The notes: generated from the letters alone by a model not told the origin. DNA of 64,000 nt from Diadema antillarum (GCF_040938485.1 NW_027271014.1:2294001-2358000); one strand, 5' to 3'; positions 12,401-63,684 are shown, counted from the first letter of the stretch. Made by a program: numbers and translations.

Positions 12401-15400
12401 TCAGATTTCTATGCAACCTGCCCTCTCTCATTAACGTTTGACCTTTGCAGAACACATCCTTGACCTTTACCTCAGACACGTTGGCCAGGACCAGAGTGTT
12501 GAGCATGGACCTGAGACTCTTCAGACAGGTCTGTTTGAGTCCATCCAGGACCAGGGCATCCATGTGGTCCACGTATTCCTCCCAGGCAGGGGAGGCCCGG
12601 CTGATCTGGACGACCTCAAAGCTGTTCTGGAGCAGGGCGTGGATGCGCAGGCCTGACGGCTTGATCAATCGCTCAATCTCGTCATCAAGCTCTCTGTGTG
12701 TGTAGTCAGAAAAAGGACAGTTAGAGAAGTGATAAAAGTACATATTATAAACAACAATATGGCAATGAAAGTAAAGATTAACAGAAAGATAATAATCACT
12801 TACCACCATCAGCAGCAGCAGCATTTTCATCAGAACAACAAAATACAATAAAACACAATATGGAATTATCAAACATGGCAAAATTGTTAAACTAACATGA
12901 CTTCAAGAGGCAAAAGCTATATGTCCATCCGCCCCCTTCTTTTTTTCTTTTCAATGTAAAGGGATAATGTGACTCTGTTAAGAAGATATGGGTTCAATGG
13001 TTGTGTAGCAATAACATCCTTTCAGTCTTTGAGAAGACATGTGGGGTTCCAAGTTTAATGACATACAATGCATTGAGAATGAAGCACAGTTTCAAAAAGC
13101 AAAATGTAATACTCTTCAAGTATTGTCCCCTGACCTTTGCCAATCCAGGAGTCTGTTCATGGAGTAGCTCAGCGAGGGCAACCTGCACTCAAAGACGTCC
13201 AGCGCGCCGCTTGACCACTTCTGGGTGACCTCCACCATCTCCTGGCAGTTAGACTGGACAATGGCCAGTGTCCGGTGGAGGTCAGCACCGACCAGGGCTG
13301 AAGCCAGCTCGATGAAGTCAGCACTCTCTGTCGTCTTCCATGTGTAGTGGTTCAGGCCTTGCTCCAACAACTGAATGGAATTATAATTGAAAAGACATGG
13401 TAAAGTTGGTGGCCCATTCAAATATGTAAGAAACTCTTTTAACATTCTCTCGTGAACATTATGCCTCCTTATCTAGCAATATTGGTGGTGATTTAGAACC
13501 AAGTTTACAATTTTGTGAGGAGCATACGAATGGTGATGCATTCAAAAGACACATGCATTTCATATCATATGCGAGTTTTCATGCCTGCATTCATACCTAT
13601 TCTTTTTTTTTTTCAGTAAATATCATCAGAGCATTTCTTATTCCTAAACATTGTTCCAAAATTTCTTTTTACAAGAAAAACATTTCATGAAGAATTGTGG
13701 AAAAATAAAAAAACAAAACTGCCACTTATTATACATTATAGTATTCTGCTGATACATATGCCCTTCTGTGTTCACTAGAAACTTGCAAAGTGGGAAAGTA
13801 GGCAGCAAAACAAGATCTAGCTGGAAGGCAGTAATATAACTCACATGGTCAATCTTGCCCAGCTTGCGCTCAAACAGCGGCCTCTCAAAGTCCACAATGG
13901 AGCGCATAGCCTGGTTGTACTTGGAGACGATGGTCTCCAGACGGGCAGCCGTGGTGCGCAGCGTGGCCCCATCGGTGTGTCGCAGCAGCTCCCTGACGCC
14001 GTCTGGCAGCTTGACGTTGAAGGGCGCCTGGGCCAGGTAATGGACCTCACGGAGCAAGAGCAGGAGCTCTGGGTCCAGGTTGACGTGCAACACTTGGGGC
14101 CTGAGCTCAGTCTCTTCGTCGTAGTCCTCAGCAGTCTGTAACAGCACAAAGATTAACACATGGCACATATACATACCACCATACTTGTAAGCATCAATGC
14201 ACAGTTGAACACCTTTTAATGTTTTACAAAAAGTTCACTAAGTGCAAAAATTATCATTTCCTTTTCTACACATTGAGATAAAATTATGCCCTGTCCAAAA
14301 ATATTCTTCAAATTGCACTTTCTGTATTAAAAACTTGGTTTGTCCAAGTAAATGTGTTCAAAAAAGTAAGAATTCATCCAAAAGAGAAAAAATAGAAGAC
14401 ACTTGACTGTGATAATGCAGTATTCACACTAATCCAGCCACCCACCAAATTGTACAAGCTTATAATGTACTTAGAAGCAGAGTGAATGCACAAAAACTAA
14501 TCAAACTAAAGATTGCTAATAAGGAGAGCTTATTAACTGTTTTTTCCCAGTGGTACAATAAAATGCACTAACCAGTAAGGGCTGTTTCAGTCTGTCCCTC
14601 AGTTCAGCGTGTAACATACGCTGCCAGTCACTGACACTCTTTGCCTCGTACTTATCCAGGTCACTCATGGTGTCATTGAAGACGTCCCTCAGATGCCAGC
14701 CAGCATCCCCGTCCAGGGAGTGTGGACTGATCCTCCTCAGTTTCTCCATAGGTTCCTGAAGGAAAAACAAGATATTCCACTTCAGTTGAGGAGGGGGAAC
14801 ATATTGAGGGTGAGCATATTTCTACAGTGTGTACATCACTTGCGTGATTTATACTGAGCTTCACAGAAAAATATAAATGTGATCTTGCTGGAATAATGAA
14901 ACATTCAATTCCTCCTACTAAGACAGCACTAAAAAACCAACTTCAACGAAGTATTAACACTGTGGGAACTTAGATAAGTTAATGTTAATCATGAAAGCCA
15001 GCTTTAGAAGAGAAGTAAAGAAAGGATTGATCACTAATAACATCAACTAAGTGTTTGTTTTTCCCCTTTTCTTGTACACCAATTGGACAACAAATTAATA
15101 GCCAGGCTTGAATCTACACTTCTGCCTGAAAATTGGCATCCCTGATAAGATAATCTCACCTTTATCCTCTTCTTCAGGGCTCCGACCCAGGTCAGCTTAC
15201 AGACGATGGGAGGAAGGTTGGCATGGAGTGGAGGTTCCTGGGACTTGGCGATGAACATGGTGCGCACGGCGATCAGCTCATTGGTGAAGGAGCTGATCAG
15301 GGCCTGGTCCTTGTCCTTGAGGTATTCCTGGACCATCTCCCGACCGCTCACCCCCTCAAAGACCTCCAGGAGGCGTAGCTGGGAGCCGATGGTGGGGCAC

Positions 15401-16884
15401 TGGCAAAAGCTCTGCCGCAGCACACTAGCAAGCCGCCTCTCCAGGTCCTGTGGCAGTCAATTATCAAGAATTATTGCAACAACTCCAGAAGATTACAGCA
15501 AAGTAATTGTACACACATTATCATTTCCTTTAGTGAACAGAAATTACAGATTTCTAGCACCACTGTATAGCTGACATAGCAATGCTGTCATGTAATGTCA
15601 GCAATCAACTATTATCTTCAAACTACTTTTTTTCTTCTGTTTTTTTTAGGATACAGTGAAATTCCAACCACATACAATCTTGATAATTCCTGGTTCTGAG
15701 GGTTTTTTTTTCCATGAGTAGATAATAGTTTTGTTGTTGTTGTTGTTTTTCTTTTTCTTTTTTTTCCCCTTTTTTTTTAATTTGCAGTATTTATTTTCAA
15801 ATGTCCATTACAGCACTGATTATATGAATAGACTTTCTGTAAAACCACTACAGTGATATTTTTTTTCTGGTTCATTTTGCAAAAAGCTCAATGAAACCAT
15901 TCACACATTTGGCAAACATTAAAAAGTCTAGTTAAACACACCTGATTATGACTTATTAACCAAATCCCACTATGGTTCAATTATCTCGTAACACAAAAAT
16001 ACTGCTCAATCAATTGAAAACCAAAGAGGTAATGCTTAACATCCTGCTTCACAACAAATTCAAGGAGATGTCCTTGAAACCCCATCACAGTATCTCTCTC
16101 ACCTTGACCACAGAGCGGAACATGAAGAATGACTTCTCAAAGGCCTGGCTTTCAGTGATGTCCAGAATGTCGTTGACCTCGGACCCAAAGTGCTCCATGG
16201 AGGCGGTGAACTCTTGGTGGATCTCCCTGACGAGGGCGTCGAGGCTCTTGGTCCCGGCCCCGCCCACCTCAGCAGCCTTCTGCAGCAGGTTGAAGTGACG
16301 TGTAGTCTGCACCAGCTCTAGGAGGTCATTGCACCTTTGAAAGACAAAAGAAAAAGATCTTTATTATAGACCTGAAAGATTTCTGAGATGTCTACTGCAT
16401 TGGATAAAGCAAGAATTATACTTCTGAAAAGAAGTTGATAATACCAAATTAAAGATATTGGACGTAATGAACAGGCAAAATCAGAAGCGATAATTTTTCT
16501 TTTTTATATCAATGAGCAATATTTGCTACAGTCTTGAAGTGGAAGAAAACTTTCTCCAAAGTCAATTTGCAACACATTGTCTTGCAACACATTATCAGAC
16601 GACAACCATGCATATTCTCAACATTATTTTGTTATATAACGATCACAGTAAGTGCATTAGCGCATGAAAGTTTAAAGCCTTACAATCGTGGTGAGTGGTT
16701 TGTGTGGCACGGAGACTAACGCAACACGCTGCCTCCCCCCATTCTGTATCAAATGTCGTGACACCGAATGAGAATAGCGCTGGCTCAATGGGTCAGCAGA
16801 CACACACTGGTCTAAAAATCACCTGACCCAAAATGTCTGTCCGAGCCACCAGAGCTTCCGAAGGGATCCGAATGGACGCACACT

Positions 16885-46688: not shown

Positions 46689-47618
46689 GTTTTATGACGT
46701 TATTATCCAGTACTTCTGCATAAACTGCGAGGACTATAGGAGAACGAGATGGACGACCCTATAACATCTGATATTGTGGTGGTTAAAAGAAGAGTAAATT
46801 TGTGCATGGAAACATGAAGGATTTTTTTTTTCCTGATAAAAATATATAAAGATAAGTATCCTTGCATTGGTATGGGCCGACTTGTATCATATTTTTGTGT
46901 TTTTGTTTTAATTGTCTTCTGGTGATCAGGGTAGGAGGCCTTGTGTACATGATCAGTTTAAATAAGGTATTCAAGTCTAATTTAAGCGCCCGATGATTTT
47001 ATCGCGTGTAATATTATTCCTTTTCAGAAATACAAGTATTACTACAACTATCATCACTATAATAGTATCATCATTATCATTGTCGCATACATTTGGTACT
47101 TTAAAAAAATGAACTAATCAAATCTTAGTACTGGGTGATAATCTGCTTGTTCTCCAGCCTTACCTACAAAAATTCAAATTCTACATACCCACACTTGAAG
47201 ACACAACAATGCCATTATACAAAAGAAACTATTGGCATTCTTCAGTTGAAAGAACCCTTGTCCTGACACGCTTCATTTCCTTTATTTAAAGGGTATTGGT
47301 GCCATTCTGTATCATGTTTTATATACGCCATAACTAATAGCTATCACATTATGCTCGAGAAGATGCAAAATCACAAGCAGCGTATCAAAATAACTGATTA
47401 GATAGCTTGTTATACGAAAGTATCAGACCAAGCGTTGATTGTTATAGCACACATGGTCATTTAATTTCATTAAAACAATGTTGACACTTATACTATTTTC
47501 TCTCTCTCCGAAATGACTGTCACGAAGTACGAATCTAATGAGTCATTGAAGTGCGTCCATCCTCTCCTGAATTCCATTTCCTTTCTCGTCTTGACTTCGA
47601 CATTGGATATCCGACAAA

Positions 47619-47666
47619 ATGGCACAAGAACTAACGGAAATGACATCAATTCAGGCTCTTGAGACG
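47619..47666 (+). CDS. ZU5-DD gene exon 1
   Basis: caaaATGG context, MAQELTEMTSIQALET /gtaaat, phase 0 matches the acceptor before 48499. Confidence 0.65.
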
Positions 47667-47929
47667 GTAATAATTGAAGTTCGAAAAGAGCTTTCATGTT
47701 CTTGATTTTTAAAGATTAAACATATTCTGAAATTTAAAAGCTGATACCTAAACAGAAATGCTGTTTCTGCTTCTCTGCTCATAACTTTTTTAGTATGTTA
47801 GCTCTTTGTCTGCAATCCACAATGAAATTATGACAGATTCCAAAGTTATGTGCATGTTTATACTGTTGATGGGTGTGTAAGCACTAATGTATATGTGTAC
47901 CCCAGTAGTGCAGTTTATACCTGTGTGTG

Positions 47930-47965
<36 letters not shown>

Positions 47966-50900
47966 GTGTGTTGTGTGTGTGGAGGACAGGGATACACGGA
48001 TACACTTACTGAAATACCGTGTCTTTGCGTTAGTTCCATTTGGTAAAGGTGTCTTTACACTTCTCATGAATCAATGTGAGCTTCTGAATTCGTTTATATG
48101 AATTGTGTAATTCCTAGAACATGCAAACAAAAGAAAATGATGAAAAATAATCAAAATATAGAATGAAGGCTTATCAACTCACCGCATCATTCTTATGTTA
48201 TCAGAGAATAAATGATAAATGCAATAAAGAACATGATTACTTTATTCTGCATGGAAAATAATGTTACAGTCAAATGATCACATTATGCGACCAAAATACG
48301 CTGCAGGCATGATGACATTATAGAAGATAAATTCTTCGACATGACAAAAAACTATACGAATGCATTAACGAGAGAGGTGTAGCATTGTTTGAAAACACGA
48401 TTGGAGTCTGAAGTATTCAGATGATGAATAACGCTCATTTTACAAACTGATAATGTCAATATTAAACTGTTCAACGTCAACGCTTCCTTCCATCACAGTC
48501 TTCGCTGCCGTTGGGCATCATACAACGCTTGGAAGATTTGGAGGACCGTCACCAGAAAATCATCCAGAATGCAAAATCTCAGCATCGTGCGTTCATAAGC
48601 AAGATAAGAAAGGAACATGCTGCCTTGATGAAGTATGACGTAGAGACATTGGTGGACGTCATCACCTCCAGCCTTCCGCACAGGGAAGACAGCGATCTGC
48701 AGGTCTTACGGGACAAAATGCGGCAGGACGGTGAAAACCTGCACTGGATGCTGCATGAAATTAAATGGTCTACCACAGCAGGTCCTACTAGTCCGCCAAG
48801 TGAGGAAGTTTCGCGAATTATGGATAACCTCCTTCACCTCGAGCAAGAGACCATCGAGGCGCTGATAAATAATCATTACGAAGTCATGAAAACAGAGCTA
48901 GGAAACGGAAAAGCCATCAGACACAAAATCATCCAAGGAAAAAAATCAGGAGTCGTTGAGACAGTGCCCGCCATGTCGAGATGGCGTATTTATCAGTGGG
49001 AGCTGTCTGTTCTTACGCGGCTGCTTGACGATCATCTGAAGTACCAGAAGGCCGAAGAAGCATGTGTAAAAACAATGAACACATTTCTACACATGCAATA
49101 CCATGCGCTCCAAAAGGACAGACGCCTTGCAGAAGTCGACTTAAAGCTGTACGATACATGCCTGAGAAGCCATTACGAGGTCATGCTACAGGTAATGACT
49201 TCACTAAACGACGTGTTTCAAGATTGCAGGAAAGGCCTTGACATGCCACCAATTTACTGGCGCCAGAAAGATTCTCCACTCAACGTCATGAGAGATATTC
49301 TTTGCTTAGGAAAGAGAGCACGAGAATACGTAATGAGGGCTGAGAGTGAGCATCGCGACGTCGTCATCAACTTCGATGCCAAGAACAAAGCTGTCGTGCA
49401 AGGTGAGCTGTTTCCGGAGAGCGCAAGTTACCGTAAAAAGTGGGACGACGTCCATTACGCTGAGCGGGAGGAGCAGTACCTGAAGGAGATGAAGAAACTC
49501 TCAAGAGACACGGAAAGGAATGTTCAGATGCTTTCCGAGAAGATTGCCGCAGAAAGGGCAAGTCCTCAAGGAGTACGTATGTATGATATAGGCCTATGTG
49601 CAAAGTTCTTTAATCAGATAATAACATAAGGTTCGTTATCAGGAAAATTCGTTATGCTGAAACATACAAATTACATATACCTAAGTGTTTGTAGCCCCAA
49701 AATGAAAAAAGGGGTTCTTTAATCCAAGTATTTGTAGCGTTATTCCGGAGGTTTCTCAATCTGAAAATGATACAAAAAAAAAGAAGAATCCGGAATTACA
49801 AACCCTATTAACGAACCTCTGGAATAACAATGTTTATTCTTTCATTTTTGGGATTAACGAATATTCAGACTTACTAACTGACGTTATTTCTGTTTCGGAT
49901 TTACGAACCTTCGGAATAACGAACTGTAACCTTCCTTACATTATCATCATAATTATGTAAAGGTTGTCAGTGGTAAACGAGATTTATCGGTGGTAGGGTA
50001 TTGATCACCTGTTCAATACCGATTGAGTATTCTCTCTGCATGACAAAGGCAACCAACAATTCAAAGAGAATTATGCCTAAATGTATAGGAAGACTCAGTT
50101 ATTGAAGCAACATTAGCATACATTCGTGAACTTTGAGGTAAATGCCAATTATTCGTTTAAAAGTTACAAATCTGCAGTGTTTTGGTGGTGCCATCGCTTG
50201 GTAAAAAGTCAGCAGTTCATGACGTCACTACAAGACAGTAAAACAAACAATATAGTCATAAAGAGAATTCTCTTTCACAAAATGTCATTTTGTTTTGAAA
50301 GATAAACGTTCCCCCGTCTTGCTATTGATAAGTGTTAGGGCAATAATCCTACTGCTTTCTTAAAGTGGTTGGTCAAGTGCTATTCCATTACGCCAGAAAA
50401 AAAAAAGAATATTGTTGTTTTGTATTGATAAAAAAAAAACTTTTTAAAAATTGTCACATATTCTTTACATATCTATTCGTTGAATTCGTGCACATTGGCA
50501 TCATCCCCCTCAATTATGTCAAGTCAAGAACAAATCCGCACATGTTGCCTGACATATAGGAGCAGAATATACAAATTCGTTTATTGCATGGTTCATTACT
50601 CCAGGTAAAGTAATCCCACTCCAATTTTGCACTCACAATTTCAAAACAACTGTGTGTTTTGTTTGTTTGTTTGTTTTGTTTTGTTTTTGTTTTTTTTTTG
50701 GGGGGGGGGGGAGGGAGGGCACAATGTTTTGAAGCTTCCGATCAATGTCTCCAGTGAAGTGAGCTTAGTCGTTTTGAGCTCACATAAACAAGCAACCCCA
50801 AATAGATAAACAAACAAATATAAAGACAACAAAACCAAGCAAGGATATAATTCACCAAACGCAAACGTGGATATGATTTTGCGTGGTTGTGCTCATGAAA

Positions 50901-53900
50901 ATAAATTTTGACGAGGATTGCTGTACAATTATTGTTTAAAGTGTGTACTTAGCAGTTCATGTGTTCTGAATTGACCTAAAGGATACCAAAGACTTGTACA
51001 TGAAACTAAGATACAGCATTTGTTCTGGTTTCACACCTCAGGTATCACGTGGATATGGCGGCAGCGACATAGCGGAGCTCTCTCTCGAAGACGGGCCGCT
51101 CGCTGACATCCTGGCCGAAGAATGTGAGAAATTTCCCGATCGCGTAGAGTTCGAAGTTGATATTCACGATCGCGATATCTCGTTGGACTGTCTCAACCAT
51201 GCTGTCGTTGCAAAGCAGCTTCCAGCTCTAAAGATCTTAAGTCTGAAGACAAACGCAGATCTCATGAGACTCGGAGATCTGATCGCCGCCCTCTCTATCC
51301 TTTGCCCCGGGATGACAGAGCTGAATATCGAAGCGAGTAAGATTAAGACACGGTACTCTCAAGCATTGCAGCTGCATGCTCTTTTTGGGCAGTCCTCATT
51401 GATGAATCTTCGCCTCAGTACCGAGTCTTTTCTCGACTACGTACACCTAATGAAGTTGATAGCATTTGTGTTGCCTACACTGTAAAAAATTTGTTTAGTT
51501 TCTAAACACCTAACTAAACACTTTTCTGTGACAGTTTAAAAACACTGCGACGTGTTTATATATTAAACATGTTTATGAACTAAACACATGCTGTGTTTAT
51601 TTTCAGCACACCCTAGGTGTTTATCACACACACATGTTTATGTTTTAAACGGTTCTGATGTTTAAAAACTAAACACCTGCTGTGTTTATAGCCTAAACAC
51701 CAAACGTTTACACCGTAATCACTCACAGTGTTTAAATACTAAACACCGCACAGTCACATAATCACCCACAATGTTTAAGATCTAAACACTGAACCAAAAA
51801 ATAAACATGACGCACTGTTTACGATGTAAACACTGCGACATGTTTATTCGCTGTGACAGATTAAAAACACTGCGACATGTTTATTTGCCATTCTAGTGTT
51901 TATTTTCAGAACACATGTCTGATTTTTAGATCGATCACAAAATTGCATACACTAAACATGTGACATGTTTACATATTAAACATCGCAATTTCTCAGTGTT
52001 TATATGATACATGTTTACACCTTATACATGCCGAGTGTTTATATGAGACATGTTTACACATCATACATGGTAATTTCCACGTGTTTATATGAGACATGTT
52101 TACACATCATACATTCATACATGCTAATTTCTACGTGTTTAAATGAGACATATCATCATGCATGTTAATTTCCATGTATTTATTAATGTAAAGTGGATTG
52201 TTTCCACTTTTTTTTGCATGGAATAAGATAAACGCATAACATTATATAGAATTTACCCAGTATGTACCAAATCATTAGCACACTTACATCGCATAATACC
52301 AGGGAAGACCTGGGTTAGCTTTCACAAACATTTTGGCTACAAGAGTTAAAGGCAATTCTCTGAATGCAAGTTATCAAAACATCAGTCAAAGCTTGGGCAA
52401 TATCTGATGAATAATATAAGTTAAAATCCTTTAAAGGGGAAATCGAGTCCAATAAACAAGTCTGATAAAAAAGAGTAAAACCTTACCAGTTTAACAGTAA
52501 AAATTTGAATGAAATTGGATGAAAAATAAGGAAGTTATCAAATGAAGATTTGCTAATTTCTGCCAAGCAGTTAAAAGTGGATATGAATATGCAAATGAGT
52601 GTGTTGACCATGCCATAACCTCACAATTTTCCATTGATCGCGTACCCCCCAAAAAACGATGAAATTCAATGTTTATGTTAATGAAATGTGAAACATTATG
52701 GTATTGCTGGTTGAATAACTTCAGAAAATTGATCAATTAGATATATCAGGACTTGAGCCTCGGGAATAATTGCGTTTGAATGAAAAACTTGAAATTAAGT
52801 AAGTTGTGAGGGAATGACATACCCACGTTGCCATTTGCATATTCATATCAACTATTCAAGAATTGTTTCCTCAAAAATTAGCGAAACTTCAAAATGTCAT
52901 AACTTCCTTATTTTACATCCGATTTCGATCAAAATTTTACCAATGAACTCTTAATATTTTATTTTTTCTTATCAGACTAACTTGTATTTGGACTGGATTT
53001 CCCCTTTAAATATTGCCATGTTATTGCTATACGACACAATACTGAGTTAAATGCAAGATACCTGGGAGTCACTGGCCTGTACGAAGACGTAAATGGAATT
53101 CTCTCCTATACACACAGTAAAGTTTGTATTTGCAGGAAATGACACATAACTCATTTTGGAGAAAAAAAAATATTGCATTTAACAATTACTTTTCAGTCAC
53201 ATGTAATTCTTAGCCTACTTTCAAGAATTGCCGTCTTTCTACTGTATTCAGAACTAATTCTTAGTATTGTAAAACAAACGAATAAACTTGTTGATTGTGA
53301 ATTGCAACTCAACGCTTCGGAAGCTTGACATGTATGTAACACCTCCAGGAACATAACTGCAGTCTGTGAACAAATCGATGTCGACCTTGAAGATTGCATC
53401 AATTATTGACAAAGTGCTTTGGGGTGTACCCGAACCAAATTAGGCTCACGGCAAATTATACAATGCACAACACTATGGTCGTATTGGTACTGATCAGGGA
53501 GTGTAGATGATGCACTCATCATAAAGAGACCCCCCCCCCCCCCACCAAAAAAATAAAATAAAAAAAATATAAAAAAAATAAATAAAAAATGTTTTCACTG
53601 TATTTAGCCTGTGGTGAACATCTGCACTCCCTGATCAGTACCAATAATGGAATTTAAATACATACATGATATTGTTCTTTTCACTGCGACGTCCACTGAA
53701 AGTACATGTAGGCTAACAGTACTGTATTGATTTTTCACTTTTGCTATTTCGGGAGAAATCTTAGAATGTTAGTGGTTTTCAAAAGGTGAGTGAGAAAAAA
53801 CTTCTACCTTGCTAGAACCTTGGAGAAAGAAGTCAAACTCAATGGGTATACATGAATAGTCTATTAGAGTCTAATCAGTCTCATCATACTCCACATAATC

Positions 53901-56900
53901 ATGGTATGGAGGGCTACTTTCAATCTCGACACAGCAGAATTTTTGGTAAAGACAAGAGGATATGAACAAAGAAAAAATAATGCATTGCAACTGGAGGGGG
54001 GAGGGTATGCAAGGCTGTCATGAACACGCGATGTGATCAGCAAGACTCCTCCCTTGTCAATTTGTCAGTCAGTTGCAAGACTCCTCCCTATTCTCCATGC
54101 ATGTTGTACTACATTTCTGATACCTCTCTCCATGTGACAGATTTCAAGAATATCTCAGAAAGAAACTATTAACTACCGAATGCTGCATTTCCTATCAGGT
54201 CTACAGGAAAATTGCAAAGAATTCCAAACAAATGCAACTACTGGCCTCTTATTTGCGTCCAATATCTGCTGATTGTATTTGAAGCACCTGAGGGAAAAAA
54301 AAGAAATGGCTGATATTTTGATTTGATTTGTTTTGATTTCTATATTCCTTTTTGCACAAGAATATAACAGAAAGCCAATCGAACAAAGTTCTTGAGTAAT
54401 ATATTAACAGTGAATTACAAGGATATTGGTTGATGAATAAAATGAAGTGAATAAAACTGTTTTTCTTAGTAGTGCAAAACGATTTCGAGCAAGTGTCTTT
54501 ACATAATAGATAACATTACAATTTTACGTACCAGCTGTTAAAATAAGACAATTACACATATCTATCAGCAATAAGAATACAGGTGACCATTATCGTAAGC
54601 ACAGAGGACAATAGAATCGCTTTGTTTTGGATATCCCTGCCATTTCAAAACCAATTTTCATCAAATAAGCATTGAATTCCTCTTCGAATTATATAGGCCC
54701 CCTACCTTCATATTTCTTTAGAGGTTCGTCATTATGTAATACACGCATACACGCACACGGAGAACTGAAGCCCCAGCACATTCAAACCCCTATCAACCCC
54801 CATATGATTTACTTTATTCTAGTATACAGGTTTAGATGCACACTGTCAGTGAAGAAAAAAAAAAACAATAAGAAGGTTGCTCTAACAGGTGGGATGCCTC
54901 CTAATAGGTCTGTAGTGCATCATGACGATGTGAGACATCACATGGCTAGCGGGAAAAAGATTGTTAACATTCAAAATCATTATCCATGGTTCATTTCCTT
55001 CATATGGCATGTAGGCCTATAGATATACTGTATATCAGTATATCTTGCGATGTCCTTGTAATCCTCAGATGTTTGCACTTTTAGACGGGTTGTATAGAAG
55101 TAAGCGCATGCATCTTTCATTCTAATCCAGACAGGTTTGGCGTGATCCCCGATCAATTCTTCCATGACGTACTGGTGCTGGTAAAAAGAAATGATTACAC
55201 AAGGAAAACAAATCAGTTGGCTTTGCAATACAATGGACTTAACTGCTCCCATAGATTCTGAAAATGAATGGATAGCAAAAAGTTGACTGAATCCATAAGC
55301 AAGTTCAAATTAAAAGGAATGACAGAATCCCTTCATCACATTAGCACATAGTGTCTTGCGTCAGTTTTTACTTACTCTGCTGAATTTTCTGGAAATAATT
55401 CAAGTCTTTTTGTTGTTGTTTCTTCTTTCTTATTCATCATCATTATCAAGCAGAGTTACGACCATACTGTATCCTTTGTCTCTTGGGTGAAGATTTTCAC
55501 ATCTGTAACTTACACTTTCAACAATATTTGCAATAAATAAAATTTCCATGTCTATTTTAGCTAATGGATTGAATTCGGGAGTCGGGAGTAGGTAATCCCC
55601 CCCCCCCCCCCTTAAAAAAAAAACACACACACACAAACAAAAGAAGTTAAAGCATCTAAAATCTGCATTTTATAGAAACTCATTTACATACTCTTTAAGT
55701 ACATAATATTCATTGATTTGGCCCTGCAATTTTGAGTACTGACTTACTTGATTTCCAATTTCCACATGGGCAGTATACAGTGATGTACTATCCCCAGTCG
55801 ATTTACTCTGCTGACTACACCATGCCTCGTTCTCTGCCAGCAGAGGTAATGTCTTGCAGGATTCATACAGTAAACGTCAGGACATCATCGTCACCCACTT
55901 TGGTGCCATCGCCATCCCCTTCCAAGACATCCTAATGGGCTTTACATTCAATTTTCACCACCTGTTGAGTGAAGAATTTACAGGGAATAAAACTGAATTT
56001 CACTCAAAATATAGTCACTAACCCATCGTCATTCACATGAAAGATACTTCATAACTTCGTAAAATTAAAGATACAGTGAGTTTACCCGCTGGGCCGAGTT
56101 TACCCATAACTACGGTACCGGTAATTTGCAGAGTGTAGGCCTAGATATTGTAACGTTAACAACACTAACACGTTACAGGTAGAGCGTTCCCCGTTCTAAC
56201 GTAACTTAGTCGTTAGATTTAGAAATAGAAAACTAAAACAAACGAGCAAAATCTTTAAGGGCGTAGCTTATTTCCACGCCTACAACAGTTTTACATTAAA
56301 CGAGGGCGATTTTGCAATAAATCTTGTTATTCACCGACTTAGCTGACTTAGCAGACTCACCGCTTTCATGCAGGCCGGCCAGGCTAGAACTTTATCCCTT
56401 CGACGCCATCTTAGCTAGATCCGCTCCTTTATGCAGTGCGGCATGCAGTCAGCAGTGCAGTCAATCGAGTCGTAAGTGCAGTGTGTGGACGACCAAGCCT
56501 AGAACGAATGCGCACGTACTGTAGGCCTACGCACATCACGCTGCTGGGGCATGCAATCGCAGCACCAGCCAGCCATTCAGACAGATCCATCCGTACAGGT
56601 ACGTACGCGCGTGCACATCTCCTTTCCCGCCAATTGTGCATTGATTATGGTCATAATCATGCATAGCACGAGTGGGCGCTAGAAGCGCACGCACAGGGCA
56701 CCACTGCGTGCGTTGTGGCCGCGGCCGTCATGTCACAATACATGCGCTGCTGACTTGTAGAGTACGAGTATAAGTGTTTATGTTAAACATGTGCGGTGTT
56801 TAGAACGTGTTTACGAGGCGTTCTAAATGTAAACGCGTCTGTTTAATCCTGACAGTAGAAGTGTTTAGGCCTAACCAACAAACATTTGGGTTATGCCCTA

Positions 56901-59900
56901 AACCATGAACGAAATCATTAACAAAGGCAACTCCCATTTTTTTCTAGCAGTTAAAATATAGGACTGTACATGCGAAACCAAAATATAAATTTATTACAGT
57001 TTTATTACATATTTTTAGGTTATCCTTTTTCCTTATTGATTAGGCATTTCCATGAAAGGCCTAAAACATGAATTATTTCATAGTGCATCTTGATGTCGTA
57101 ACAGTTTCCACTTTCTCGTGATAAAAGGAAACTAGAAATTGCAATTTACACACCATTTCCAACACTTCTCCATGTATATATGGACATATTGAGATTAACA
57201 TAACGTGACCAGAATAAACACTCCAACTAAACACTCCAAGCTAAACACTTTAACTCTCAATACTTTACACGTGCTATACACACCGGGTGTTTAGATGTTA
57301 AACAAAGTGTTTAGATTTTTAACACTGTGTTTAGTTCATAAACATGTCGCATGTCGCATTTTTTACAGTGTACTTTAAAGGTACTGGATATTCATGCCAA
57401 TTCACTGTTCCTGCATCCGAGCCAGGAATTCGCCGAGATACAGGCCACAGCAGTAAGGGTGCTTACGGTGTCTTGGCAGTCATACACTGATGGTTTGGAA
57501 CAACTCGTTCCTCTCATCCTGGCGGCGTGTCCGAATTTAGGGCTGCTTTTCCTGAAGGGTTCTGCCTTCTATCATCAATTCGTCGACTTTGAAGCCACTT
57601 CGCGCAGCCTGACCGGCCTCAACGTACTGTCAGTGACATCCAGTGAGAAGGAAATTGCAAAAGAGGTCCTTTCCAGACTCAGGACGTCATTATGTCCACA
57701 CCTACTGCCTCCGAAGCTGGTGGACAATGTGTACATCATGTGTGCCAAGTCAACAAGACCAGGTAAGGACAGTTGATAGTGCAGAGTTGGCGGGGTAAGG
57801 GATGATCTGGTTCATGATATCATTGTTCGTATTTCTCCTTCTATTACGTTTAAAGCACGCTTTAGATGTTGTTTTGAACAAGAAAGACACACGTTACACG
57901 CTTCGTCCAAACAAAATTTTAACCAGCATGTTAATTTCTGTACATCCAGAGATTCACGCTTTGGAACCGCATACGACTTTCGCAGAAACTTTCGATCAGA
58001 AGGGAGGAACCCTCGAAATATATCGTTACGGCTTCACTCTCTGTATTCCTCCCGGCGCTCTGGAAACAAGCACTGGCATTTCTATCAGGGTTCTGACAGA
58101 CCTTCCCCGTCAACTGGACTTGCCGGAAGACGAGATGGCGGTCAGTTTGGGCTTCGAGTGTTTTCCTTCGGATATTCACTTTCTCAAACCACTCAGACTG
58201 ACCATACCACACAATGCTGTACTCATCGACCCTGGCCGAGTTAATGCGGTGCTGTATTCTGGCAAGTCTAGTGAAGACAGTGAGTATAACACCAACATTT
58301 TTTCACCAATAAGTGCATAATAATGATAATATATCCATAGTGACATAGTGCAGCTTGGCTAAACTCTCACGATCATATATACAAAGGCCATCACTTCACA
58401 TTCAATATTCTCTTGCAATAGCTGTCTTTTTTGGTAAAAAGAGAAGAGATAAAAAAAGAGAGAATATATTGGAAGGGGATGCCTCTTAATTTTGGGCAAT
58501 TAGCTTTGAAAATTTTGTCTATGATGTGACCTGATGGTGTGTATTATGATTTTGTGTAATCAAAGATGGCGATTTGTCGAGGGAGTTGCTGCGCCCTCGT
58601 CGTTGTGTTGTAAAGAGAGATCATCTGGAGGTGATGCTCGACCACTTTTCCTTTGGATTCGTGACTATACTGTACGACTGGCTGTTTGTGAAGAGCAAGC
58701 GCATAGCTTGTACGCCATTCCTTCCTAAAGTCTGGTCAAGCAAGCAGGCGATCCTCCATTTCCGCGTTTACGACCAACTCCAAGGAATGTCGAAGGTTNN
58801 NNNNNNNNNNNNNNNNNNNNNNNNNNNNNNNNNNNNNNNNNNNNNNNNNNNNNNNNNNNNNNNNNNNNNNNNNNNNNNNNNNNNNNNNNNNNNNNNNNNN
58901 NNNNNNNNNNNNNNNNNNNNNNNNNNNNNNNNNNNNNNNNNNNNNNNNNNNNNTGATACGTCTATCTCAATCTCTTGAAATGTCACTCCTTCACGAAAGT
59001 ATTCACTTTTACTGTATCTGAAAATCAACGGAACAGTCATTAGGTCTACTGCCTCAAGGGATAATGGTTGTACTCACATGGTGGTGTCATTTTTCTTTCT
59101 TTTTTTTTGCATGGAATGCCCATGGTACCGCTAAATCATTCAAGTATACTGCAGTGATCATTCGACAATGTTTTTTTTTTTTTTCATTATTCAGCTAATT
59201 CTGAATCGATATCACAGAGCACTCATTCAAAAGACAACTTTTTCTGGAGAGCACTACGGGGTGGGATGTGGGTCTCTCCTGTTTGTTTGTTTGTTTGTTT
59301 GTTTGTTTGTTTTCTTGTCATCTCAATGGCTTTCCCGAAGATAAGACGGACCAGGCAGGCAACATTCAGTTAAGCCTCATTCTAGACTAATGTCATGACT
59401 ATGTGTTTTAGAAGATAAGACGCATTTCCACTTACGCATGATAATGATACAGTTAGACAGTGTTTTAAGGTCGATGATTTCTGCAGGATATTGTTGAGGA
59501 GGAAGAACAGATGGGATACAAAAAGGTGAGCCCCGAGGAGGAGATTCGTTTGAGTACTGATGGCAAGGATCTACGCATTAGATGTCAGCTGTCGGGATCT
59601 CCTCATGTGCAAGAGAAGGTATACATCTCTCTGTCAAAACAAAACAAAACAACATAAAACAAGACAAAGTATACAAAAAACAACATTTATTGGACAAAAC
59701 AAAGCATAACACAAAAATACATATCTATCAGATTATTTTTTCTCTTTTTGTCTTCCTTCTCATCGTAGTATTGCTAGTGGAAAAAATAAATAAATCGTGC
59801 TCATTTTTTTTTTTTGTCTTATGCCAACGTAGTGCACTGTGGCCTATGACTTATATTTGAATAAACTCACGTCATGACTTTTGAGTGTGCAATAATCTTA

Positions 59901-62900
59901 CATTGTAACATGAATAAAGATCATATCACCATGTAAGGAAATGCGAGATAAGGATTAATGACAAGAAAGAATTGGAACTGATTGACATGAATATGAAAAA
60001 CAAGAATTGTTTGATGAAAAAAAAAACTGTACACAGAGTAAATAAAATGATCATACGCGGCAAGTATTTTTTACTGTCTGTGTGCTAAGGGTCTGTTATT
60101 GTTCATAATTATGACACTACATCCTACGTCTCCTTTTTTATCATGTGTTTTATTATGGGAATTTGCGTATCTGCTGTCTTTCACAAACGTCTTGATACAA
60201 CGCAGATAATCAGTTACAGAGATCTCTGCGAAATCACCAAGCGAACTGTTTCTATCAACCTGGATGTGGCAGGATTAGAGCAGCCCAATGCTCTCGTCAC
60301 CCTAACTTTGGAACAGGACTCGTCACTTACAATCTTATTTCGGACAGGTTATGCAGGTACGATATACTCTGCCATATCATACCTAATTTTGCAAGTGTAA
60401 GAGGAGAAAAGGCTGGACAGGTTTGCTAGTTTCACCTTTGAATGTGAATATTCTTTCTCCGAGACCACGATAACGCAGACTATTATGTTAATTTCCCTCC
60501 GAGTATGCAAGACGGTTTGCACGCATCGATTATTGCTGTGTCGCTTGGTAATCGGGCAGACTTTCAAGGTGTTAAGTATACAGAACGTTTGAATATGTTG
60601 ATTAACCGGCTGTTAAATTCCTTACTTACTAGCAGTACTAAATTTGTAAACGTACATTTTATCAGGGGCCTGTATATATCGCCCAATTTTTTTTTTTTAA
60701 CGGTAAAGACCTTTTGCCCCTCTCTTTTTGGTATAAATCAAGCAAAGTTGGGGGATCGTGATTTTTCATACATGGACACAAAACTTTGGAATATCCTTCC
60801 AAAATCACTTCGACAAGCATCTTTTATTGATGCTTTTAAAAATAAACTCAACACCTACATTTTCAATTTAATTAGAAATATTTTATCCTGTATGTACCTA
60901 AATGGGCGTATATTGTTTGTTTGTTTATTGTTCTTATATCTTCTGTGCTACTATGTTGTAACGTGATACATTTTATGTATATTCTGTTCTACAGCGCCAT
61001 GAGTATCTTTTTGAGGTAGAACGAGCGCTTTATAAGAGTCTCTCTTTTATGATTATCTTAACTATAATTTCAATTTCAAAATTTGATTTCAATTTCAAAA
61101 TTTGATTTTAATTTCAAAATTTGATTTCAATTTCAGTTTGAATCTGTAATACCAAATCAAGTAAATAGTAATCTACTCTGACACAATGTGGTTTTGCTCC
61201 AGTAGCATGAACCAGCTTCAATATAATTAACCAGGATCCTTTCGTGTGTGTGTGTGTGTGTGTGTGTGTTTCATGAAAATTCATCAATTCCGGAATATTC
61301 GGGCAAAGATTGTCAGATGTTAATTTTCTTTTCGAAATCTGCCGACAAATTTTCAGCTTACCGTTAGAATCCTTCATATTTCTCAGGTTTTTTGCTCTGT
61401 TCATCACAATTATCAGCATTTATGACAGTGAAATTCCATTAAATCTGTACACGTATTCCTTTCGTTACTTTCGATACTTTGTTTTCAAGTTATGTATTTT
61501 ATATCATCGTATACTATAACAATGATGCTACCTTTGAGAATTCGGAAATAAACGAAAATGATAAACAGACTGAACTGAAACTGAACCTGATGTTTGTTTA
61601 TATGTGACTCTGCACCTCAAAACAAACAAAAAGTCGCCAGACATGAATTTTTAGTTAAGACCATATTCTGAAAGAGCAGACTTTAAGCTTTAAAATGATG
61701 TATAATTCAAATCAAATGGACTCTCCTAACATATCTAAATTTTGGAAAGAAAGCACAAACTCAGGAAAAGTGTGAACTGAGAAAAGAGGCTCTGAAGTAC
61801 AATGTTTATTCAAGCGCATAATCTTTACCAAACCGTGCTGGCTGTGCGATGAATGGGACAAAAAACAGGAAGTAAACCACCAGAGTAACAACAATGAAGG
61901 GATTATCAGATTAAGCTGAAATTAAGCATGCCTCATTAACACATTCTGTCCATAATTAATGCCAACTTTCAAAGCAGTAGCACTATCCTTTCAAAGGTTA
62001 TTAGAGTTGAAATTGAAGAGCGTGGACAAGGTTTTTCAGATATGAAAAAGGGATTCTAAAGACACACCTGATCACACTATTCTACCAAAAATGTTCGAGA
62101 TAAACTGCTAAAAAAAAACACACTTTCCTGCCCGTTTTATGATACCAAATTTTAGCATAATGTAAAAGAAGACCCGCTCTTTCAGAAAATATGAAAAAGT
62201 CAAGTTCGGCTAGGTTGACCCATTTCACTTAATTTCAGTCCTCACGCAAAATCAGTGTGTGCGACTTAATGTTCGTTTTGAGGTGCACTGTCACATATAC
62301 TCACCATAGTCTACACATATGGTTTGAGAGTGTTTAACTTTCACAAAAAACAAAAGAAAAGCAACAAAAAAAAAAACGGGTACTATAGTAAGTATATTGG
62401 TAAAGCGTGGCTGGAGTATTACGACACTGAAAACGTTTCATAGGGAGAAAAAAGCGATTACCATAATCAAACCAATTATGATCGTTGTTATCGAATAGTG
62501 ACGATTGACATTAGTTTTATCACGCCAAACTCTCTGTCTCAGCAATGCTTTTCTCCATGATTAAAAGTCCTTAAACCTCAAGTACTGTGACCTACACGCA
62601 TATTCTATGATGACATCTATCATTACTATTCTTCGTAACTTTTTTATTTCTTTACGTCAGAACCTTCACAGGCAACCAAAGAAGTCGATCGTAAAGGCTC
62701 TCTACATGTTCCATGGGATATCCAGGGAAGCGATAATTATCCATTGTCATGGGCAAGTTATATCGAAGACAAGAGGCTTCCAGAATCTCTCAGGCAGTTC
62801 CTTCAAGAACAACATCCACCGACGCCCGAGGCTGTAAAACTAGTTTCACCAAGGTGTGTCACAATGAAACAACATCTGTTGAGAGATGATGATGATGGTA

Positions 62901-63684
62901 GTAATGATTATATAACATCGATGATGGAATACTTGTAGCAGCAATAAAAACAACAGCATTTTGAAATATATAACGTATATTACAATATTGATAATGACCA
63001 TTAAATAGTGCCGATTTACCTATGGAAGCAAAATAATCACAAGCACTATTCCTTTACCATTTTCTCTTATCATTAAAAAAAAAATACCATCAAGGTATAT
63101 AGTGTAGATTCATTTCGGGTGATGAAGGCATTGGCCTTTTATACATAAATTAAGTAATCATTCTAAAACTATGCATTTTTGTCATTACGTGCAGATTTCG
63201 GATGTGAATATGCATCCCACTTTAATTGACGATGCTTTTTCATGATTTGGAGCGTCATAGGGTGGTTTCTACAGAAAGTTAAGACCTGCTTTTCATGTCG
63301 AAATGTCGCAAGCCTGCCCTACGATACAGAAACTGGTGCATGTCCTAACTATTGTCTTTCAGGAGATTATTAATGCCTCAAAACTTCGACCTTGTGACCG
63401 ATGCCGAAATCGCCGACTTGTCTCCGCGGCTGCCTTCCAACAAGTTCATGATGGTTGGCGTACACCTCGGTCTGTCCAACGTCGAGGCCCAAAACATTAT
63501 GGATCGGGCCGAGCTAAGTCCCGAACTACGCTACATGACCATGCTGAACAAATGGAAAAGTCGGTTTGGTGGAGACAAGGAAGAATTGATGGAGGTTTTC
63601 AAAAAAGTAGGCCTGGGCGGTCTTTGCAGAGATGTACTGCGGAAGCGATCTTCCAAGATCTTGTCAAAAGGTCTTGAAGATTAG
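47619..63684 (+). CDS. Helical domain - LRR-like - ZU5 - UPA-like - death domain protein (PIDD/UNC5CL-like layout), about 1100 aa in 9 exons; exon 3 interrupted by a transposon, so this allele may be disrupted
   Basis: Phase-consistent GT-AG chain: 47619-47666, 48499-49572, 51042-51477+57373-57762, 57950-58279, 58566-58795, 59487-59618, 60206-60347 (or 60356), 62661-62853, 63363-63684. ZU5 and death-domain motifs are recognisable. Confidence 0.82.
47923..47980. repeat. (TG)n microsatellite
   Basis: direct reading. Confidence 0.9.
48499..49572 (+). CDS. ZU5-DD gene exon 2 (358 aa, helical/coiled-coil, unassigned)
   Basis: Longest ORF in the window; ccatcacag/ SSLPLGIIQ...ERASPQG /gtacgt, phase 0. 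Confidence 0.85.
51042..51477 (+). CDS. ZU5-DD gene exon 3, 5' part (LRR-like)
   Basis: cctcag/ VSRGYGG...LKILSLK...MTELNIE...LIAFVLP(T), cut by transposon after TA 51476-51477. Confidence 0.8.
52435..53005. mobile_element. Kolobok-like MITE nested in the CACTG element
   Basis: TTAA|AGGGGAAATCGAGTCCAA...TTGGACTGGATTTCCCCT|TTAA. Confidence 0.8.
53482..53646. mobile_element. small MITE nested in the CACTG element
   Basis: 28-bp inverted repeat TATTGGTACTGATCAGGGAGTG(T/C)AGATG. Confidence 0.6.
57373..57762 (+). CDS. ZU5-DD gene exon 3, 3' part (LRR-like)
   Basis: (T)LKVLDIH...LGLLFLK...LNVLSVT...STRP /gtaagg; in frame with the 5' part once the element and one TA are removed. Confidence 0.8.
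57950..58279 (+). CDS. exon 4, ZU5 domain
   Basis: FDQKGGTLEIYRYGFTLCIPPGAL...FECFPSDIHFLKPLRLTIPH matches the ZU5 GG.L...IPPGA...P....F.KP..L.IPH pattern; phase 1-1. Confidence 0.9.
58566..58795 (+). CDS. exon 5, end of ZU5 (HFS) and start of UPA-like region
   Basis: ...HLEVMLDHFSFGF...LHFRVYDQ; donor gtt directly before N gap. Confidence 0.8.
58799..58953. other. assembly gap (155 N)
   Basis: N run just after the exon 5 donor. Confidence 1.
59487..59618 (+). CDS. exon 6, UPA-like
   Basis: tttctgcag/ DIVEEEEQMGYKKV...VQEK /gtatac, phase 0-0. Confidence 0.75.
60206..60347 (+). CDS. exon 7 (alternative donor after 60356)
   Basis: cgcag/ IISYRDLCEITKRTVSINLDV...LFRT /gttatg or /gtacga, both phase 1. 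Confidence 0.7.
60730..61056 (+). mobile_element. 5'-truncated L2-clade LINE, 3' end
   Basis: KLGDRDFSYMDTKLWNILPKSLRQASFIDAFKNKLNTYIF resembles the L2 ORF2 C-terminus; tail CAGCGCC...GCGCTTTATAAG. Confidence 0.7.
61068..61134. repeat. 19-bp minisatellite (TTTCAATTTCAAAATTTGA)x3
   Basis: direct reading. Confidence 0.85.
62661..62853 (+). CDS. exon 8, linker
   Basis: long pyrimidine tract then cag/ PSQATKEVD...VSP /gtgtgt; phase 1 in and phase 2 out fit both neighbours. Confidence 0.72.
63363..63684 (+). CDS. exon 9, death domain and stop
   Basis: DLVTDAEIADLSPRL...VGVHLGLSNVEAQNI...MTMLNKWKSR...ELMEVFKKVGLGGL is a typical death-domain pattern; TAG at 63682-63684. Confidence 0.9.

What the first reader, a model, noticed from the sequence alone, without database searches (positions are those of the whole stretch)
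47619..63684. Unusual PIDD-like death-domain protein: helical domain + LRR-like + single ZU5 + UPA-like + DD
Seen: a phase-consistent 9-exon model of about 1100 aa with no obvious signal peptide or transmembrane segment. Known: ZU5-UPA-DD is the module of UNC5, ankyrins and PIDD1; PIDD1 has LRR-ZU5-ZU5-UPA-DD and nucleates a caspase-2-activating complex. Inference: a cytosolic sensor-adaptor with a new domain combination (360-aa helical N-terminus, degenerate LxxLxL repeats, one ZU5), possibly part of an invertebrate innate-immune or cell-death expansion.
Basis: partly seen in the sequence, partly recalled or inferred. Interest (0 to 1): 0.75.

Follow-up and report, generated by a model that had tools for sequence, protein, structure and literature searches.

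The report
Transposon-split LRR-ZU5-death-domain gene
This is a real but lineage-restricted animal gene for a cytosolic PIDD/NLRP1-style signalling protein (leucine-rich repeats, one self-cleaving-type ZU5 domain, a death domain, perhaps an orphan helical head). In this assembly it is cut in two by a 5.9-kb transposon and also crosses an assembly gap, so it is a new variant of a known kind rather than a new kind.

Summary
The exon blocks are real and phase-consistent. With the transposon removed they give 1084 aa, or 1057 aa with a stronger exon-8 donor.

- **ZU5:** solid (Pfam E 2e-13; PDB ZO-1/UNC5B/ankyrin), with an HFS motif at its end.
- **Death domain:** supported by three lines: Pfam E 1e-3, 39 of 40 Atlas look-alikes, and an AF2 six-helix model whose top 26 PDB matches are all death domains.
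- **LRR:** seven LxxLxL motifs spaced 27-29 aa (0 of 3000 shuffles), FBXL/RI-like, no Pfam hit.
- **UPA:** inferred from position only.
- **N-terminal exon (358 aa):** coding-like, single-copy and all-helical, with no relative among 1.84 billion proteins.

Two corrections:
- "Intron 3" is a 5.9-kb TA-flanked TIR transposon inside one LRR exon. Excising it restores the frame. Contigs from two other individuals leave the reference exactly at its left end, so an empty-site allele probably exists.
- Exon 6 runs into the N gap, so its join to exon 7 cannot be verified.

No RNA run was available, so the link from the helical exon to the LRR exon is untested (about 60%).

The scan had already noted the transposon and the HFS motif on this stretch, and other ZU5-death-domain genes elsewhere in this genome.

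The parts
47619..47666 (+). Exon 1: start codon in a good context (A at -3, G at +4) plus 16 codons; donor ACG|GTAATA, phase 0
   Evidence: donor score 4.5; an in-frame stop lies just upstream of the ATG
48499..49572 (+). Exon 2: 358-aa orphan all-helical region (aa 17-374); acceptor after a pyrimidine-rich tract and CAG; donor GGA|GTACGT, phase 0
   Evidence: 387-codon open frame; coding-type codon-position composition, GC3 0.55 against intron GC 0.35; single-copy depth in DNA runs; no Pfam hit; 0 hits in 1.84e9 proteins; AF2 all-helix, pLDDT 47
51042..51477 (+).
51478..57372 (.). 5.9-kb non-autonomous TIR transposon inserted in the LRR exon. 13-nt TIRs CACTGTAAAAAAT at 51478-51490 and 57358-57370, TA duplication at 51476-77 and 57371-72, subterminal TGTTTA/TAAACA repeats, nested high-copy MITE-like element at about 52418-53023
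   Evidence: 2 matches, 0.04 expected; no transposase domain in its ORFs; multi-copy depth, and contigs of other individuals diverge at 51476
57373..57762 (+).
   Evidence: donor score 12.0; Atlas look-alikes weakly FBXL/RNI-type LRR
57950..58279 (+). Exon 5: main body of the ZU5 domain
   Evidence: Pfam ZU5 E 2.2e-13, 50.7 bits against GA 21; PDB ZO-1, UNC5B and ankyrin ZU5
58566..58798 (+). Exon 6: C-terminal strands of ZU5 and the start of the UPA-position segment; open frame runs into the gap; possible donor AAG|GTT at 58795
58643..58651 (+). HFS motif (aa 786-788) followed by a long hydrophobic strand: candidate autoproteolysis site between F and S
   Evidence: position and context as described for PIDD/Nup98 HFS and CARD8/NLRP1 SFS in PMC3210808
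58799..58953 (.). Assembly gap (N). Continuity and frame across it are unknown. Not filled.
60206..60356 (+). Exon 7: 50 aa, middle of the UPA-position segment; donor CAG|GTACGA, phase 1
   Evidence: donor score 8.5; no profile or PDB hit
62661..62934 (+). Exon 8: end of the UPA-position segment plus linker.
   Evidence: no profile or PDB hit
63363..63684 (+). Exon 9: death domain (six helices at about 63400-63645) and the stop codon
   Evidence: Pfam Death E 1e-3, 19.6 bits, below GA 22.6; 39 of 40 Atlas look-alikes are Death families; AF2 pLDDT 82, pTM 0.72; Foldseek top 26 hits all death domains, TM 0.6-0.7

Best explanation
This is one lineage-restricted gene for a cytosolic protein of about 1060-1085 aa. 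Its layout is an orphan alpha-helical N-terminal region (aa 1-374), seven FBXL/RI-like leucine-rich repeats (about aa 434-640), one ZU5 domain ending in an HFS motif (aa 655-800), a segment of about 130 aa in the UPA position, a linker, and a death domain (about aa 990-1075).

Inferred mechanism, by analogy with PIDD1 and with NLRP1/CARD8:
- The ZU5 cuts its own chain between F787 and S788.
- The N-terminal helical-LRR-ZU5 part stays bound and holds the UPA-DD fragment in check.
- A signal acting on the N-terminal part frees UPA-DD.
- UPA-DD then oligomerises through its death domain and recruits death-domain adaptors towards caspase or NF-kB outputs.

Shown here: the exons, ZU5, the HFS motif, the DD fold, the LRR periodicity and the absence of a membrane segment. 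Inferred: UPA, self-cleavage, partners, output, and the splice that joins the helical exon to the LRR exon.

In the assembled haplotype the LRR exon is interrupted by a 5.9-kb non-autonomous transposon. Read-through stops after aa 521. A cryptic in-frame splice would give 1073 aa. This copy is therefore a null or weakened allele, while other individuals probably carry the uninterrupted exon.
For: - The phase-consistent model has a single stop at its end.
- ZU5: Pfam E 2e-13 and PDB ZU5 matches.
- HFS lies at the ZU5 end and is followed by a hydrophobic strand, matching the description in PMC3210808.
- DD: Pfam, Atlas, AF2 and Foldseek agree. The best structural hit is a chain of the PIDD/RAIDD death-domain complex 2of5.
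- LRR: a chain of 7 motifs at 26-30 aa spacing, reached by 0 of 3000 shuffles.
- Exon 2 is open for 387 codons. It has coding-type composition like exons 3-9 and single-copy depth.
- Excising the transposon restores a clean LxxLxL motif and the reading frame.
- 2.1-kb contigs from 3 runs (2 samples) stop matching at 51476 and run on for about 1440-1470 nt at single-copy depth.
- Exon 1 has a good start context. The exon 1-2 and 2-3 junctions are phase 0/0 with a pyrimidine-rich CAG acceptor at 51041.
Against: - No RNA run holds the locus, so no splice is verified. The exon 2 to exon 3 link rests on phase and signals only.
- An in-frame ATG upstream of the exon-3 acceptor could start a separate LRR-ZU5-DD gene.
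- Of the 10 listed variants in exon 2, 9 are non-synonymous. That means little purifying selection there.
- UPA, LRR and the helical region have no profile hit.
- The exon 6/7 join crosses a gap.
- The assembled allele is interrupted.
- No homologue of any part was recovered from the protein databases. For the C-terminal half, the tools' length limits prevented a fair search.
Confidence: 0.55

Rival explanations
1. There are two adjacent genes on the same strand. The first is an orphan helical protein of about 392 aa (exons 1-2, ending at the stop at 49627-49629). The second is a separate PIDD-like LRR-ZU5-UPA-DD gene of about 700 aa, starting at the in-frame ATG a few codons upstream of 51042.
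For: The exon 2 frame continues 18 codons past the proposed donor to a stop. The exon 2 donor is only moderate (score 3.3). The open frame of exon 3 extends upstream of the acceptor and contains an ATG. The helical region has no relatives and evolves differently. LRR-ZU5-UPA-DD alone is a complete known architecture (PMC3210808).
Against: That ATG has a weak context (T at -3, A at +4), whereas a strong pyrimidine-rich CAG acceptor sits right at 51041. The best-scoring exon-2 donor is the one in the matching phase. Codon-position composition of exon 2 matches exons 3-9. Both lie on the same strand only 1.5 kb apart.
Confidence: 0.3
2. This is a decaying locus. The gene is a pseudogene, or is being lost in this species. 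It is knocked out by the transposon, evolves neutrally and is not expressed.
For: The transposon sits in a coding exon, with a stop 6 nt inside it. The non-synonymous to synonymous ratio in exon 2 is 9:1, as expected under neutrality. No RNA holder was found. No relative was found in the databases. An earlier scan note reports a fossil ankyrin-like ZU5-UPA gene elsewhere in this genome (untested).
Against: Apart from the insertion, all nine blocks are open with intact splice signals and no frameshift over about 3.2 kb of coding sequence. Contigs of two other individuals leave the reference at the insertion point at single-copy depth, which suggests an intact allele. GC3 is still coding-like. 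The absence of RNA runs reflects what data are served, not silence.
Confidence: 0.15
3. It is the true orthologue of vertebrate PIDD1, the nucleator of the caspase-2 PIDDosome, with a lineage-specific N-terminal extension.
For: LRR, then ZU5 with HFS, then DD in that order. The best structural match of the DD is a chain of the PIDD/RAIDD complex 2of5.
Against: Only one ZU5 and one HFS were found, against two in PIDD1. The LRRs are 27-29 aa FBXL/RI-like rather than the short typical repeats, and hit no Pfam LRR model. The DD matches FADD, FAS, ankyrin and TNFR1 about equally well. No sequence-level similarity to PIDD1 was shown. One survey found no PIDD outside vertebrates among lophotrochozoans (PMC11463336).
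Confidence: 0.08

Closest known systems
PIDD1 (LRDD): LRR-ZU5-ZU5-UPA-DD
   Same: Cytosolic. LRRs lie N-terminal to the ZU5 module. An HFS motif sits at the ZU5/UPA boundary. The death domain is C-terminal, and the DD model superposes on the PIDD/RAIDD complex (TM 0.67).
   Different: One ZU5 and one HFS instead of two. The LRRs are of the 27-29 aa FBXL/RI-like class with recurring 'CP.L' motifs, not 23-24 aa typical repeats. There may be an extra 374-aa orphan helical head. No sequence-level orthology was shown.
NLRP1 / CARD8 FIIND (ZU5-UPA) proteins
   Same: The LRR, autoproteolytic ZU5-UPA and death-fold order is the same (PMC3210808). The likely logic also matches: an N-terminal sensing part restrains a C-terminal UPA-death-fold fragment.
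   Different: DD instead of CARD. HFS instead of SFS. No NACHT or PYD. UPA not demonstrated here.
UNC5A-D and UNC5CL (ZUD)
   Same: A single ZU5 followed by UPA and DD. To my knowledge UNC5CL also has an HFS self-cleavage site.
   Different: No Ig/TSP1 ectodomain, no transmembrane segment and no membrane anchor. LRRs and a helical region lie upstream instead. UNC5B has Leu in place of the cleavage-site Phe (PMC3210808).
Ankyrins (ANK-ZU5-ZU5-UPA-DD)
   Same: The ZU5 matches ankyrin ZU5 in the PDB, and the DD matches ankyrin DDs.
   Different: No ankyrin repeats. One ZU5. Ankyrin ZU5 domains are binding modules, not known to self-cleave.
Lineage-specific ZU5-UPA / death-domain fusions of marine invertebrates
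   Same: Variable N-terminal partners are fused to a constant ZU5-UPA-death-fold module (general theme in PMC8195603 and PMC8260672). Earlier scan notes report propeller-ZU5-UPA-DD genes in this same genome (untested).
   Different: I did not find this particular partner set (orphan helical region plus FBXL-like LRR) described.

Membership tests
ZU5-UPA-DD supramodule proteins | ZU5 domain | tested here: met
   Pfam PF00791 E 2.2e-13, 50.7 bits against GA 21; phmmer hits to ZO-1, UNC5B and ankyrin ZU5 structures
ZU5-UPA-DD supramodule proteins | UPA domain between ZU5 and DD | tested here: inconclusive
   About 130 aa lie in the right place, but the segment is split over three exons and a gap. 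The pieces give no Pfam or PDB hit. The joined sequence has no reference, so it could not be searched or folded.
ZU5-UPA-DD supramodule proteins | C-terminal death domain (six-helix bundle) | tested here: met
   Pfam Death E 1e-3, below GA; Atlas 39 of 40 Death; AF2 six helices, pLDDT 82; Foldseek top 26 hits all DDs, prob 1.00, TM 0.6-0.7
PIDD1 | Two tandem ZU5 domains with two HFS sites | tested here: not met
   Only one ZU5 hit and one HFS in the model. No further ZU5-like open frame lies between 57.7 and 63.7 kb. Content of the N gap is unknown.
PIDD1 | N-terminal leucine-rich repeats | tested here: inconclusive
   Seven LxxLxL motifs at 27-29 aa spacing, 0 of 3000 shuffles, but no Pfam LRR hit. 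Atlas look-alikes are only weakly LRR_6/FBXL-type. The repeat class differs from PIDD1's (my knowledge).
PIDD1 | Orthology by sequence or phylogeny | not tested
   No full-length relatives could be fetched. The length window of the homologue search excludes them for single-exon queries (one search found none among proteins of 95-300 aa).
Autoproteolytic ZU5 (PIDD1, NLRP1, CARD8, UNC5CL) | H/S-F-S motif at the C-terminal end of ZU5, before a long beta strand | tested here: met
   HFS at aa 786-788 (58643-58651), followed by a 13-residue hydrophobic stretch; criteria from PMC3210808
Autoproteolytic ZU5 (PIDD1, NLRP1, CARD8, UNC5CL) | Actual self-cleavage | not testable with these tools
   Needs expression of the wild type and a Ser788 mutant
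UNC5 netrin receptors | Signal peptide, Ig/TSP1 ectodomain and transmembrane helix | tested here: not met
   The N-terminus is polar. No Ig or TSP1 Pfam hit. The strongest hydrophobic window lies inside an LRR.
Dynein heavy chain N-terminal region (DHC_N1), as a source of the helical exon | Profile or sequence similarity to DHC_N1 | tested here: not met
   Atlas features point to DHC_N1 (low recognition of 1530). Against that: no Pfam hit at E up to 1, 0 phmmer hits in a library that must hold many dyneins, and no tblastn match to the neighbouring dynein gene, whose N-terminal exons all lie at 16-25 kb on the other strand.

The most novel reading that the evidence does not exclude
The orphan helical region plus the LRRs form a fast-evolving bait or sensor arm of a self-cleaving ZU5-UPA-DD switch. 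The switch would fire by loss of its N-terminal fragment, as in NLRP1/CARD8 'functional degradation', but with a death-domain output. It would be one member of an urchin family that hangs different sensor heads (helical-LRR, beta-propeller) on the same module. The transposon insertion would then be a segregating presence/absence null allele, of the kind seen at immune loci under balancing or fluctuating selection.
Probability: 0.15. Interest if true: 0.65.

Novelty: new variant of a known kind. Interest (0 to 1): 0.4.

Why it matters
If transcribed as one gene, it adds an invertebrate example of the LRR, self-cleaving ZU5-UPA and death-fold design known from PIDD1 and NLRP1/CARD8. It would have a death-domain output and an N-terminal region that has no relatives. 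That bears on how this switch module was recombined with different sensor heads outside vertebrates, and on whether PIDD-like platforms predate vertebrates (one survey found none in lophotrochozoans, PMC11463336).

The transposon-split exon is also a practical warning. Gene predictors will either break this gene or call the transposon an intron. The locus offers a natural null or hypomorphic allele for genetics, if the insertion really segregates.

Tried and rejected
- **N-terminal exon, whole-library phmmer:** 0 hits. It stays an orphan.
- **N-terminal exon, single-sequence AF2:** pLDDT 47, all helices. Too poor for a fold search, so none was run.
- **N-terminal exon, Atlas lead to DHC_N1/WASH helical proteins:** intriguing because the neighbouring gene is a dynein heavy chain. 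Rejected because there is no Pfam, phmmer or tblastn support, and the dynein's own N-terminal exons are all found at 16-25 kb on the minus strand.
- **ZU5 exon, homologue search:** no hits among proteins of 95-300 aa. The tool's length window excludes full-length relatives, so this says little.
- **Exons 6, 7 and 8 and both LRR halves, piecewise Pfam at E up to 10 and PDB phmmer:** nothing.
- **DD exon, phmmer against the PDB:** only chance methyltransferase hits. The DD was recovered by profile, features and fold instead.
- **RNA evidence:** the run search returned only three runs, not on record as RNA, whose contigs cover introns and exons alike (so DNA). No splice junction could be tested.
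- **Transposon:** no transposase domain in its ORFs.
- **Other:** no paralogue in the window. No Rfam family in 46-64 kb.
- **Left out:** the whole spliced protein, or exons 5-9 joined, could not be given to Pfam, HH-type or structure tools.


Full report
**What is there**

On the + strand between 47619 and 63684 there are nine open blocks. Their candidate splice sites join in consistent phases:
- exon 1: 47619-47666 (ATG in a good context, 16 codons)
- exon 2: 48499-49572
- an LRR exon now in two pieces: 51042-51477 and 57373-57762
- exon 5: 57950-58279
- exon 6: 58566 to the gap
- exon 7: 60206-60356
- exon 8: 62661-62853 or -62934
- exon 9: 63363-63684

With the transposon described below removed, the model is 1084 aa with a single terminal stop. 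It is 1057 aa if the much stronger exon-8 donor at 62853 is used; both donors are phase 2 (scores 9.3 and -1.1). The N-terminus is polar, and the only hydrophobic peak lies inside an LRR. The protein is therefore cytosolic by prediction.

**The gap, tested first**

Exon 6 is open right up to the N run at 58799-58953. The only donor in view is AAG|GTT, with three intron letters readable, so it cannot be scored. After the gap all three frames stop within 21 codons. The exon 6 to exon 7 join used in the model is phase-compatible, but continuity and frame across the gap are unknown. Up to one exon's worth of sequence could be missing.

**Domains**

- **ZU5:** firm. Pfam PF00791 gives E 2.2e-13 and 50.7 bits against a cut-off of 21. 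phmmer matches the ZU5 domains of ZO-1, UNC5B and ankyrins in the PDB.
- **HFS motif:** the ZU5 continues into exon 6, where HFS (aa 786-788; 58643-58651) is followed by a 13-residue hydrophobic stretch. This is the place and context of the self-cleavage motif of PIDD/Nup98 (HFS) and CARD8/NLRP1 (SFS). [quoted passage not shown]
- **Death domain:** below Pfam's curated cut-off (E 1e-3, 19.6 bits against 22.6) and not found by phmmer against the PDB. Three other lines support it. In the Atlas, 39 of 40 look-alike clusters are Death families. A single-sequence AF2 model is confident (pLDDT 82, pTM 0.72, six helices). Its 26 best Foldseek matches are all death domains (PIDD/RAIDD complex 2of5, FAS/FADD, ankyrin, TNFR1, RAIDD, RIPK1; prob 1.00, TM 0.6-0.7).
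- **LRR-like region:** no Pfam hit even at E 10. It does contain seven LxxLxL motifs at 27-29-residue spacing. A chain of that length was reached by 0 of 3000 shuffles. Three repeats carry a 'CP.L' motif just before the strand, which I know from FBXL/RI-type repeats. The Atlas look-alikes that have names are LRR_6/FBXL-type, but weakly so.
- **UPA:** not demonstrated. About 130 residues lie where it should be. They are split over exons 6, 7 and 8 and the gap, and the pieces hit nothing. The joined sequence has no reference, so I could not search or fold it.

**The N-terminal exon**

Exon 2 is open for 387 codons. It has G-rich first and A-rich second codon positions, and GC3 of 0.55 against 0.35 in the introns, like exons 3-9. 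It sits at single-copy depth in DNA runs. So it is coding sequence, not chance and not a repeat.

It has no Pfam family and no hit at E 1e-3 among 1.84 billion representative proteins. AF2 predicts nine long helices at low confidence (pLDDT 47).

The Atlas feature search pointed to dynein-tail DHC_N1 and WASH-complex helical proteins, with recognition below the useful level. That was worth a check because the neighbour is a dynein heavy chain (DHC_N1 E 1e-14). However, that gene lies on the other strand with all its N-terminal exons at 16-25 kb, and tblastn of the model finds nothing there. I take the resemblance as generic helical-bundle character.

Of the ten exon-2 variants listed against contigs of other individuals, nine change the amino acid. 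That is as expected without constraint, since 21% of random changes would be silent. The list is partial, but strong purifying selection is unlikely. This fits the lack of detectable relatives.

**The 'intron' that is a transposon**

Earlier scan notes on this stretch suggested it, and I tested it.
- A perfect 15-nt inverted repeat lies at 51476-51490 and 57358-57372. It has 2 matches in the window against 0.04 expected. I read it as a TA duplication plus 13-nt terminal repeats beginning CACTG.
- Many subterminal TGTTTA/TAAACA repeats follow on both sides.
- Deleting 51478-57372 joins the two blocks into one frame and creates a clean LxxLxL repeat at the junction.
- The element has no transposase domain. 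It carries a nested element of about 0.6 kb of very high copy number.
- In the only public runs found (three runs, two samples, one study; not on record as RNA, and their contigs cover introns as evenly as exons, so I take them as DNA), 2.1-kb contigs at single-copy depth match from 50840 to exactly 51476. They then continue for about 1440-1470 letters that are not the transposon, while the transposon's ends have 10-60 times higher depth. The simplest reading is an empty-site allele in those animals. The extra length would carry the contig from 57373 to about the position of the N gap. I could not see those letters, so this is inference.

In the assembled allele, read-through stops after aa 521. 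The transposon's own GT/AG-like ends would shift the frame.

**One gene or two**

What remains open is the link between exon 2 and the LRR exon.

For one gene:
- same strand, 1.5 kb apart
- phase 0/0, and the best exon-2 donor is the one in the matching phase
- a pyrimidine-rich CAG acceptor at 51041
- similar codon-position composition
- a strong start context at exon 1 and a weak one at the alternative ATG near 51.0 kb

Against one gene:
- no transcript data at all
- exon 2 could end at its own stop at 49629
- its evolutionary behaviour differs

I put one gene at about 0.6.

**How it probably works**

[quoted passage not shown] The most likely mechanism is therefore as follows:
1. Constitutive self-cleavage at F787/S788.
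2. Non-covalent retention of the UPA-DD fragment by the N-terminal part.
3. Signal-dependent release.
4. Death-domain oligomerisation that recruits DD adaptors.

Only the parts list is shown here. Cleavage, partners and output are inferred.

**Comparison and novelty**

It is not a PIDD1 orthologue by the tests available. It has one ZU5 rather than two, a different LRR class, and no sequence-level link. It is not an UNC5 (no ectodomain or membrane segment) and not an ankyrin. A single ZU5 is normal for UNC5 and UNC5CL.

Fusions of ZU5-UPA modules to many partners in marine invertebrates are a described theme (PMC8195603, PMC8260672). Earlier notes of this scan report propeller-ZU5-UPA-DD genes and about 150 death-domain notes in this same genome. 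Follow-up notes call the genome the sea urchin Diadema antillarum. I did not verify the species.

I therefore rate it a new variant of a known kind. It is of moderate interest for the orphan head, for the PIDD/NLRP1-like switch outside vertebrates (a survey found no PIDD in lophotrochozoans, PMC11463336), and for the apparently segregating transposon knock-out.

**Limits**

- There is no RNA evidence.
- There are no homologues. For the C-terminal half the homologue search cannot reach full-length relatives from single-exon queries.
- UPA is untested.
- One join is hidden by the gap.
- The empty-site allele is inferred from where contigs stop matching.

Noticed in passing
window 2000-25000, minus strand: A multi-exon axonemal-type dynein heavy chain gene. 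DHC_N1 hits at 13644-14174 and 15043-15423 (E about 1e-14), and a DYH2-5-8 coiled-coil hit at 7750-8088. Further N-terminal exons lie at 16-25 kb. It points away from the ZU5 gene (head-to-head arrangement, about 22 kb apart) and has its own N gap near 10.4-10.7 kb.
   Followed up: partly
window 52418-53023 (inside the transposon): A nested MITE-like element of about 0.6 kb with 23-nt TIRs (52430-52452 / 52988-53010, 96% complementary). Its depth is 1e4-3e5 in the DNA runs. Some contigs of the carrier transposon family skip exactly 52418-53023, meaning copies without the nested insert exist.
   Followed up: partly
window 49800-49999 (intron 2): A short, extremely high-copy repeat (word depth 1.4e5-3.5e5 against about 25-55 for flanking single-copy DNA). 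It includes a 16-nt tandem unit at 49894-49924, and many contigs break there.
   Followed up: no
window 62853 against 62934: Two phase-2 donors could end exon 8. The upstream one (AAG|GTGTGT) scores far better than the one needed for the longest open frame. If the upstream donor is the one used, the 27 codons between them, including an acidic DDDD stretch, would be intronic rather than coding.
   Followed up: partly
window 47600-51476 against contigs of runs X1-X3: About 1.7-2.2% of letters differ between the assembly and two other individuals over single-copy sequence, plus indels. This is high heterozygosity, typical of broadcast-spawning marine invertebrates.
   Followed up: no
window 47922-47981 and 61244-61269: (TG)n/(GT)n microsatellites in introns 1 and 7. 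They produce the spurious Cys/Val- and His/Thr-rich ORFs in the ORF list.
   Followed up: no
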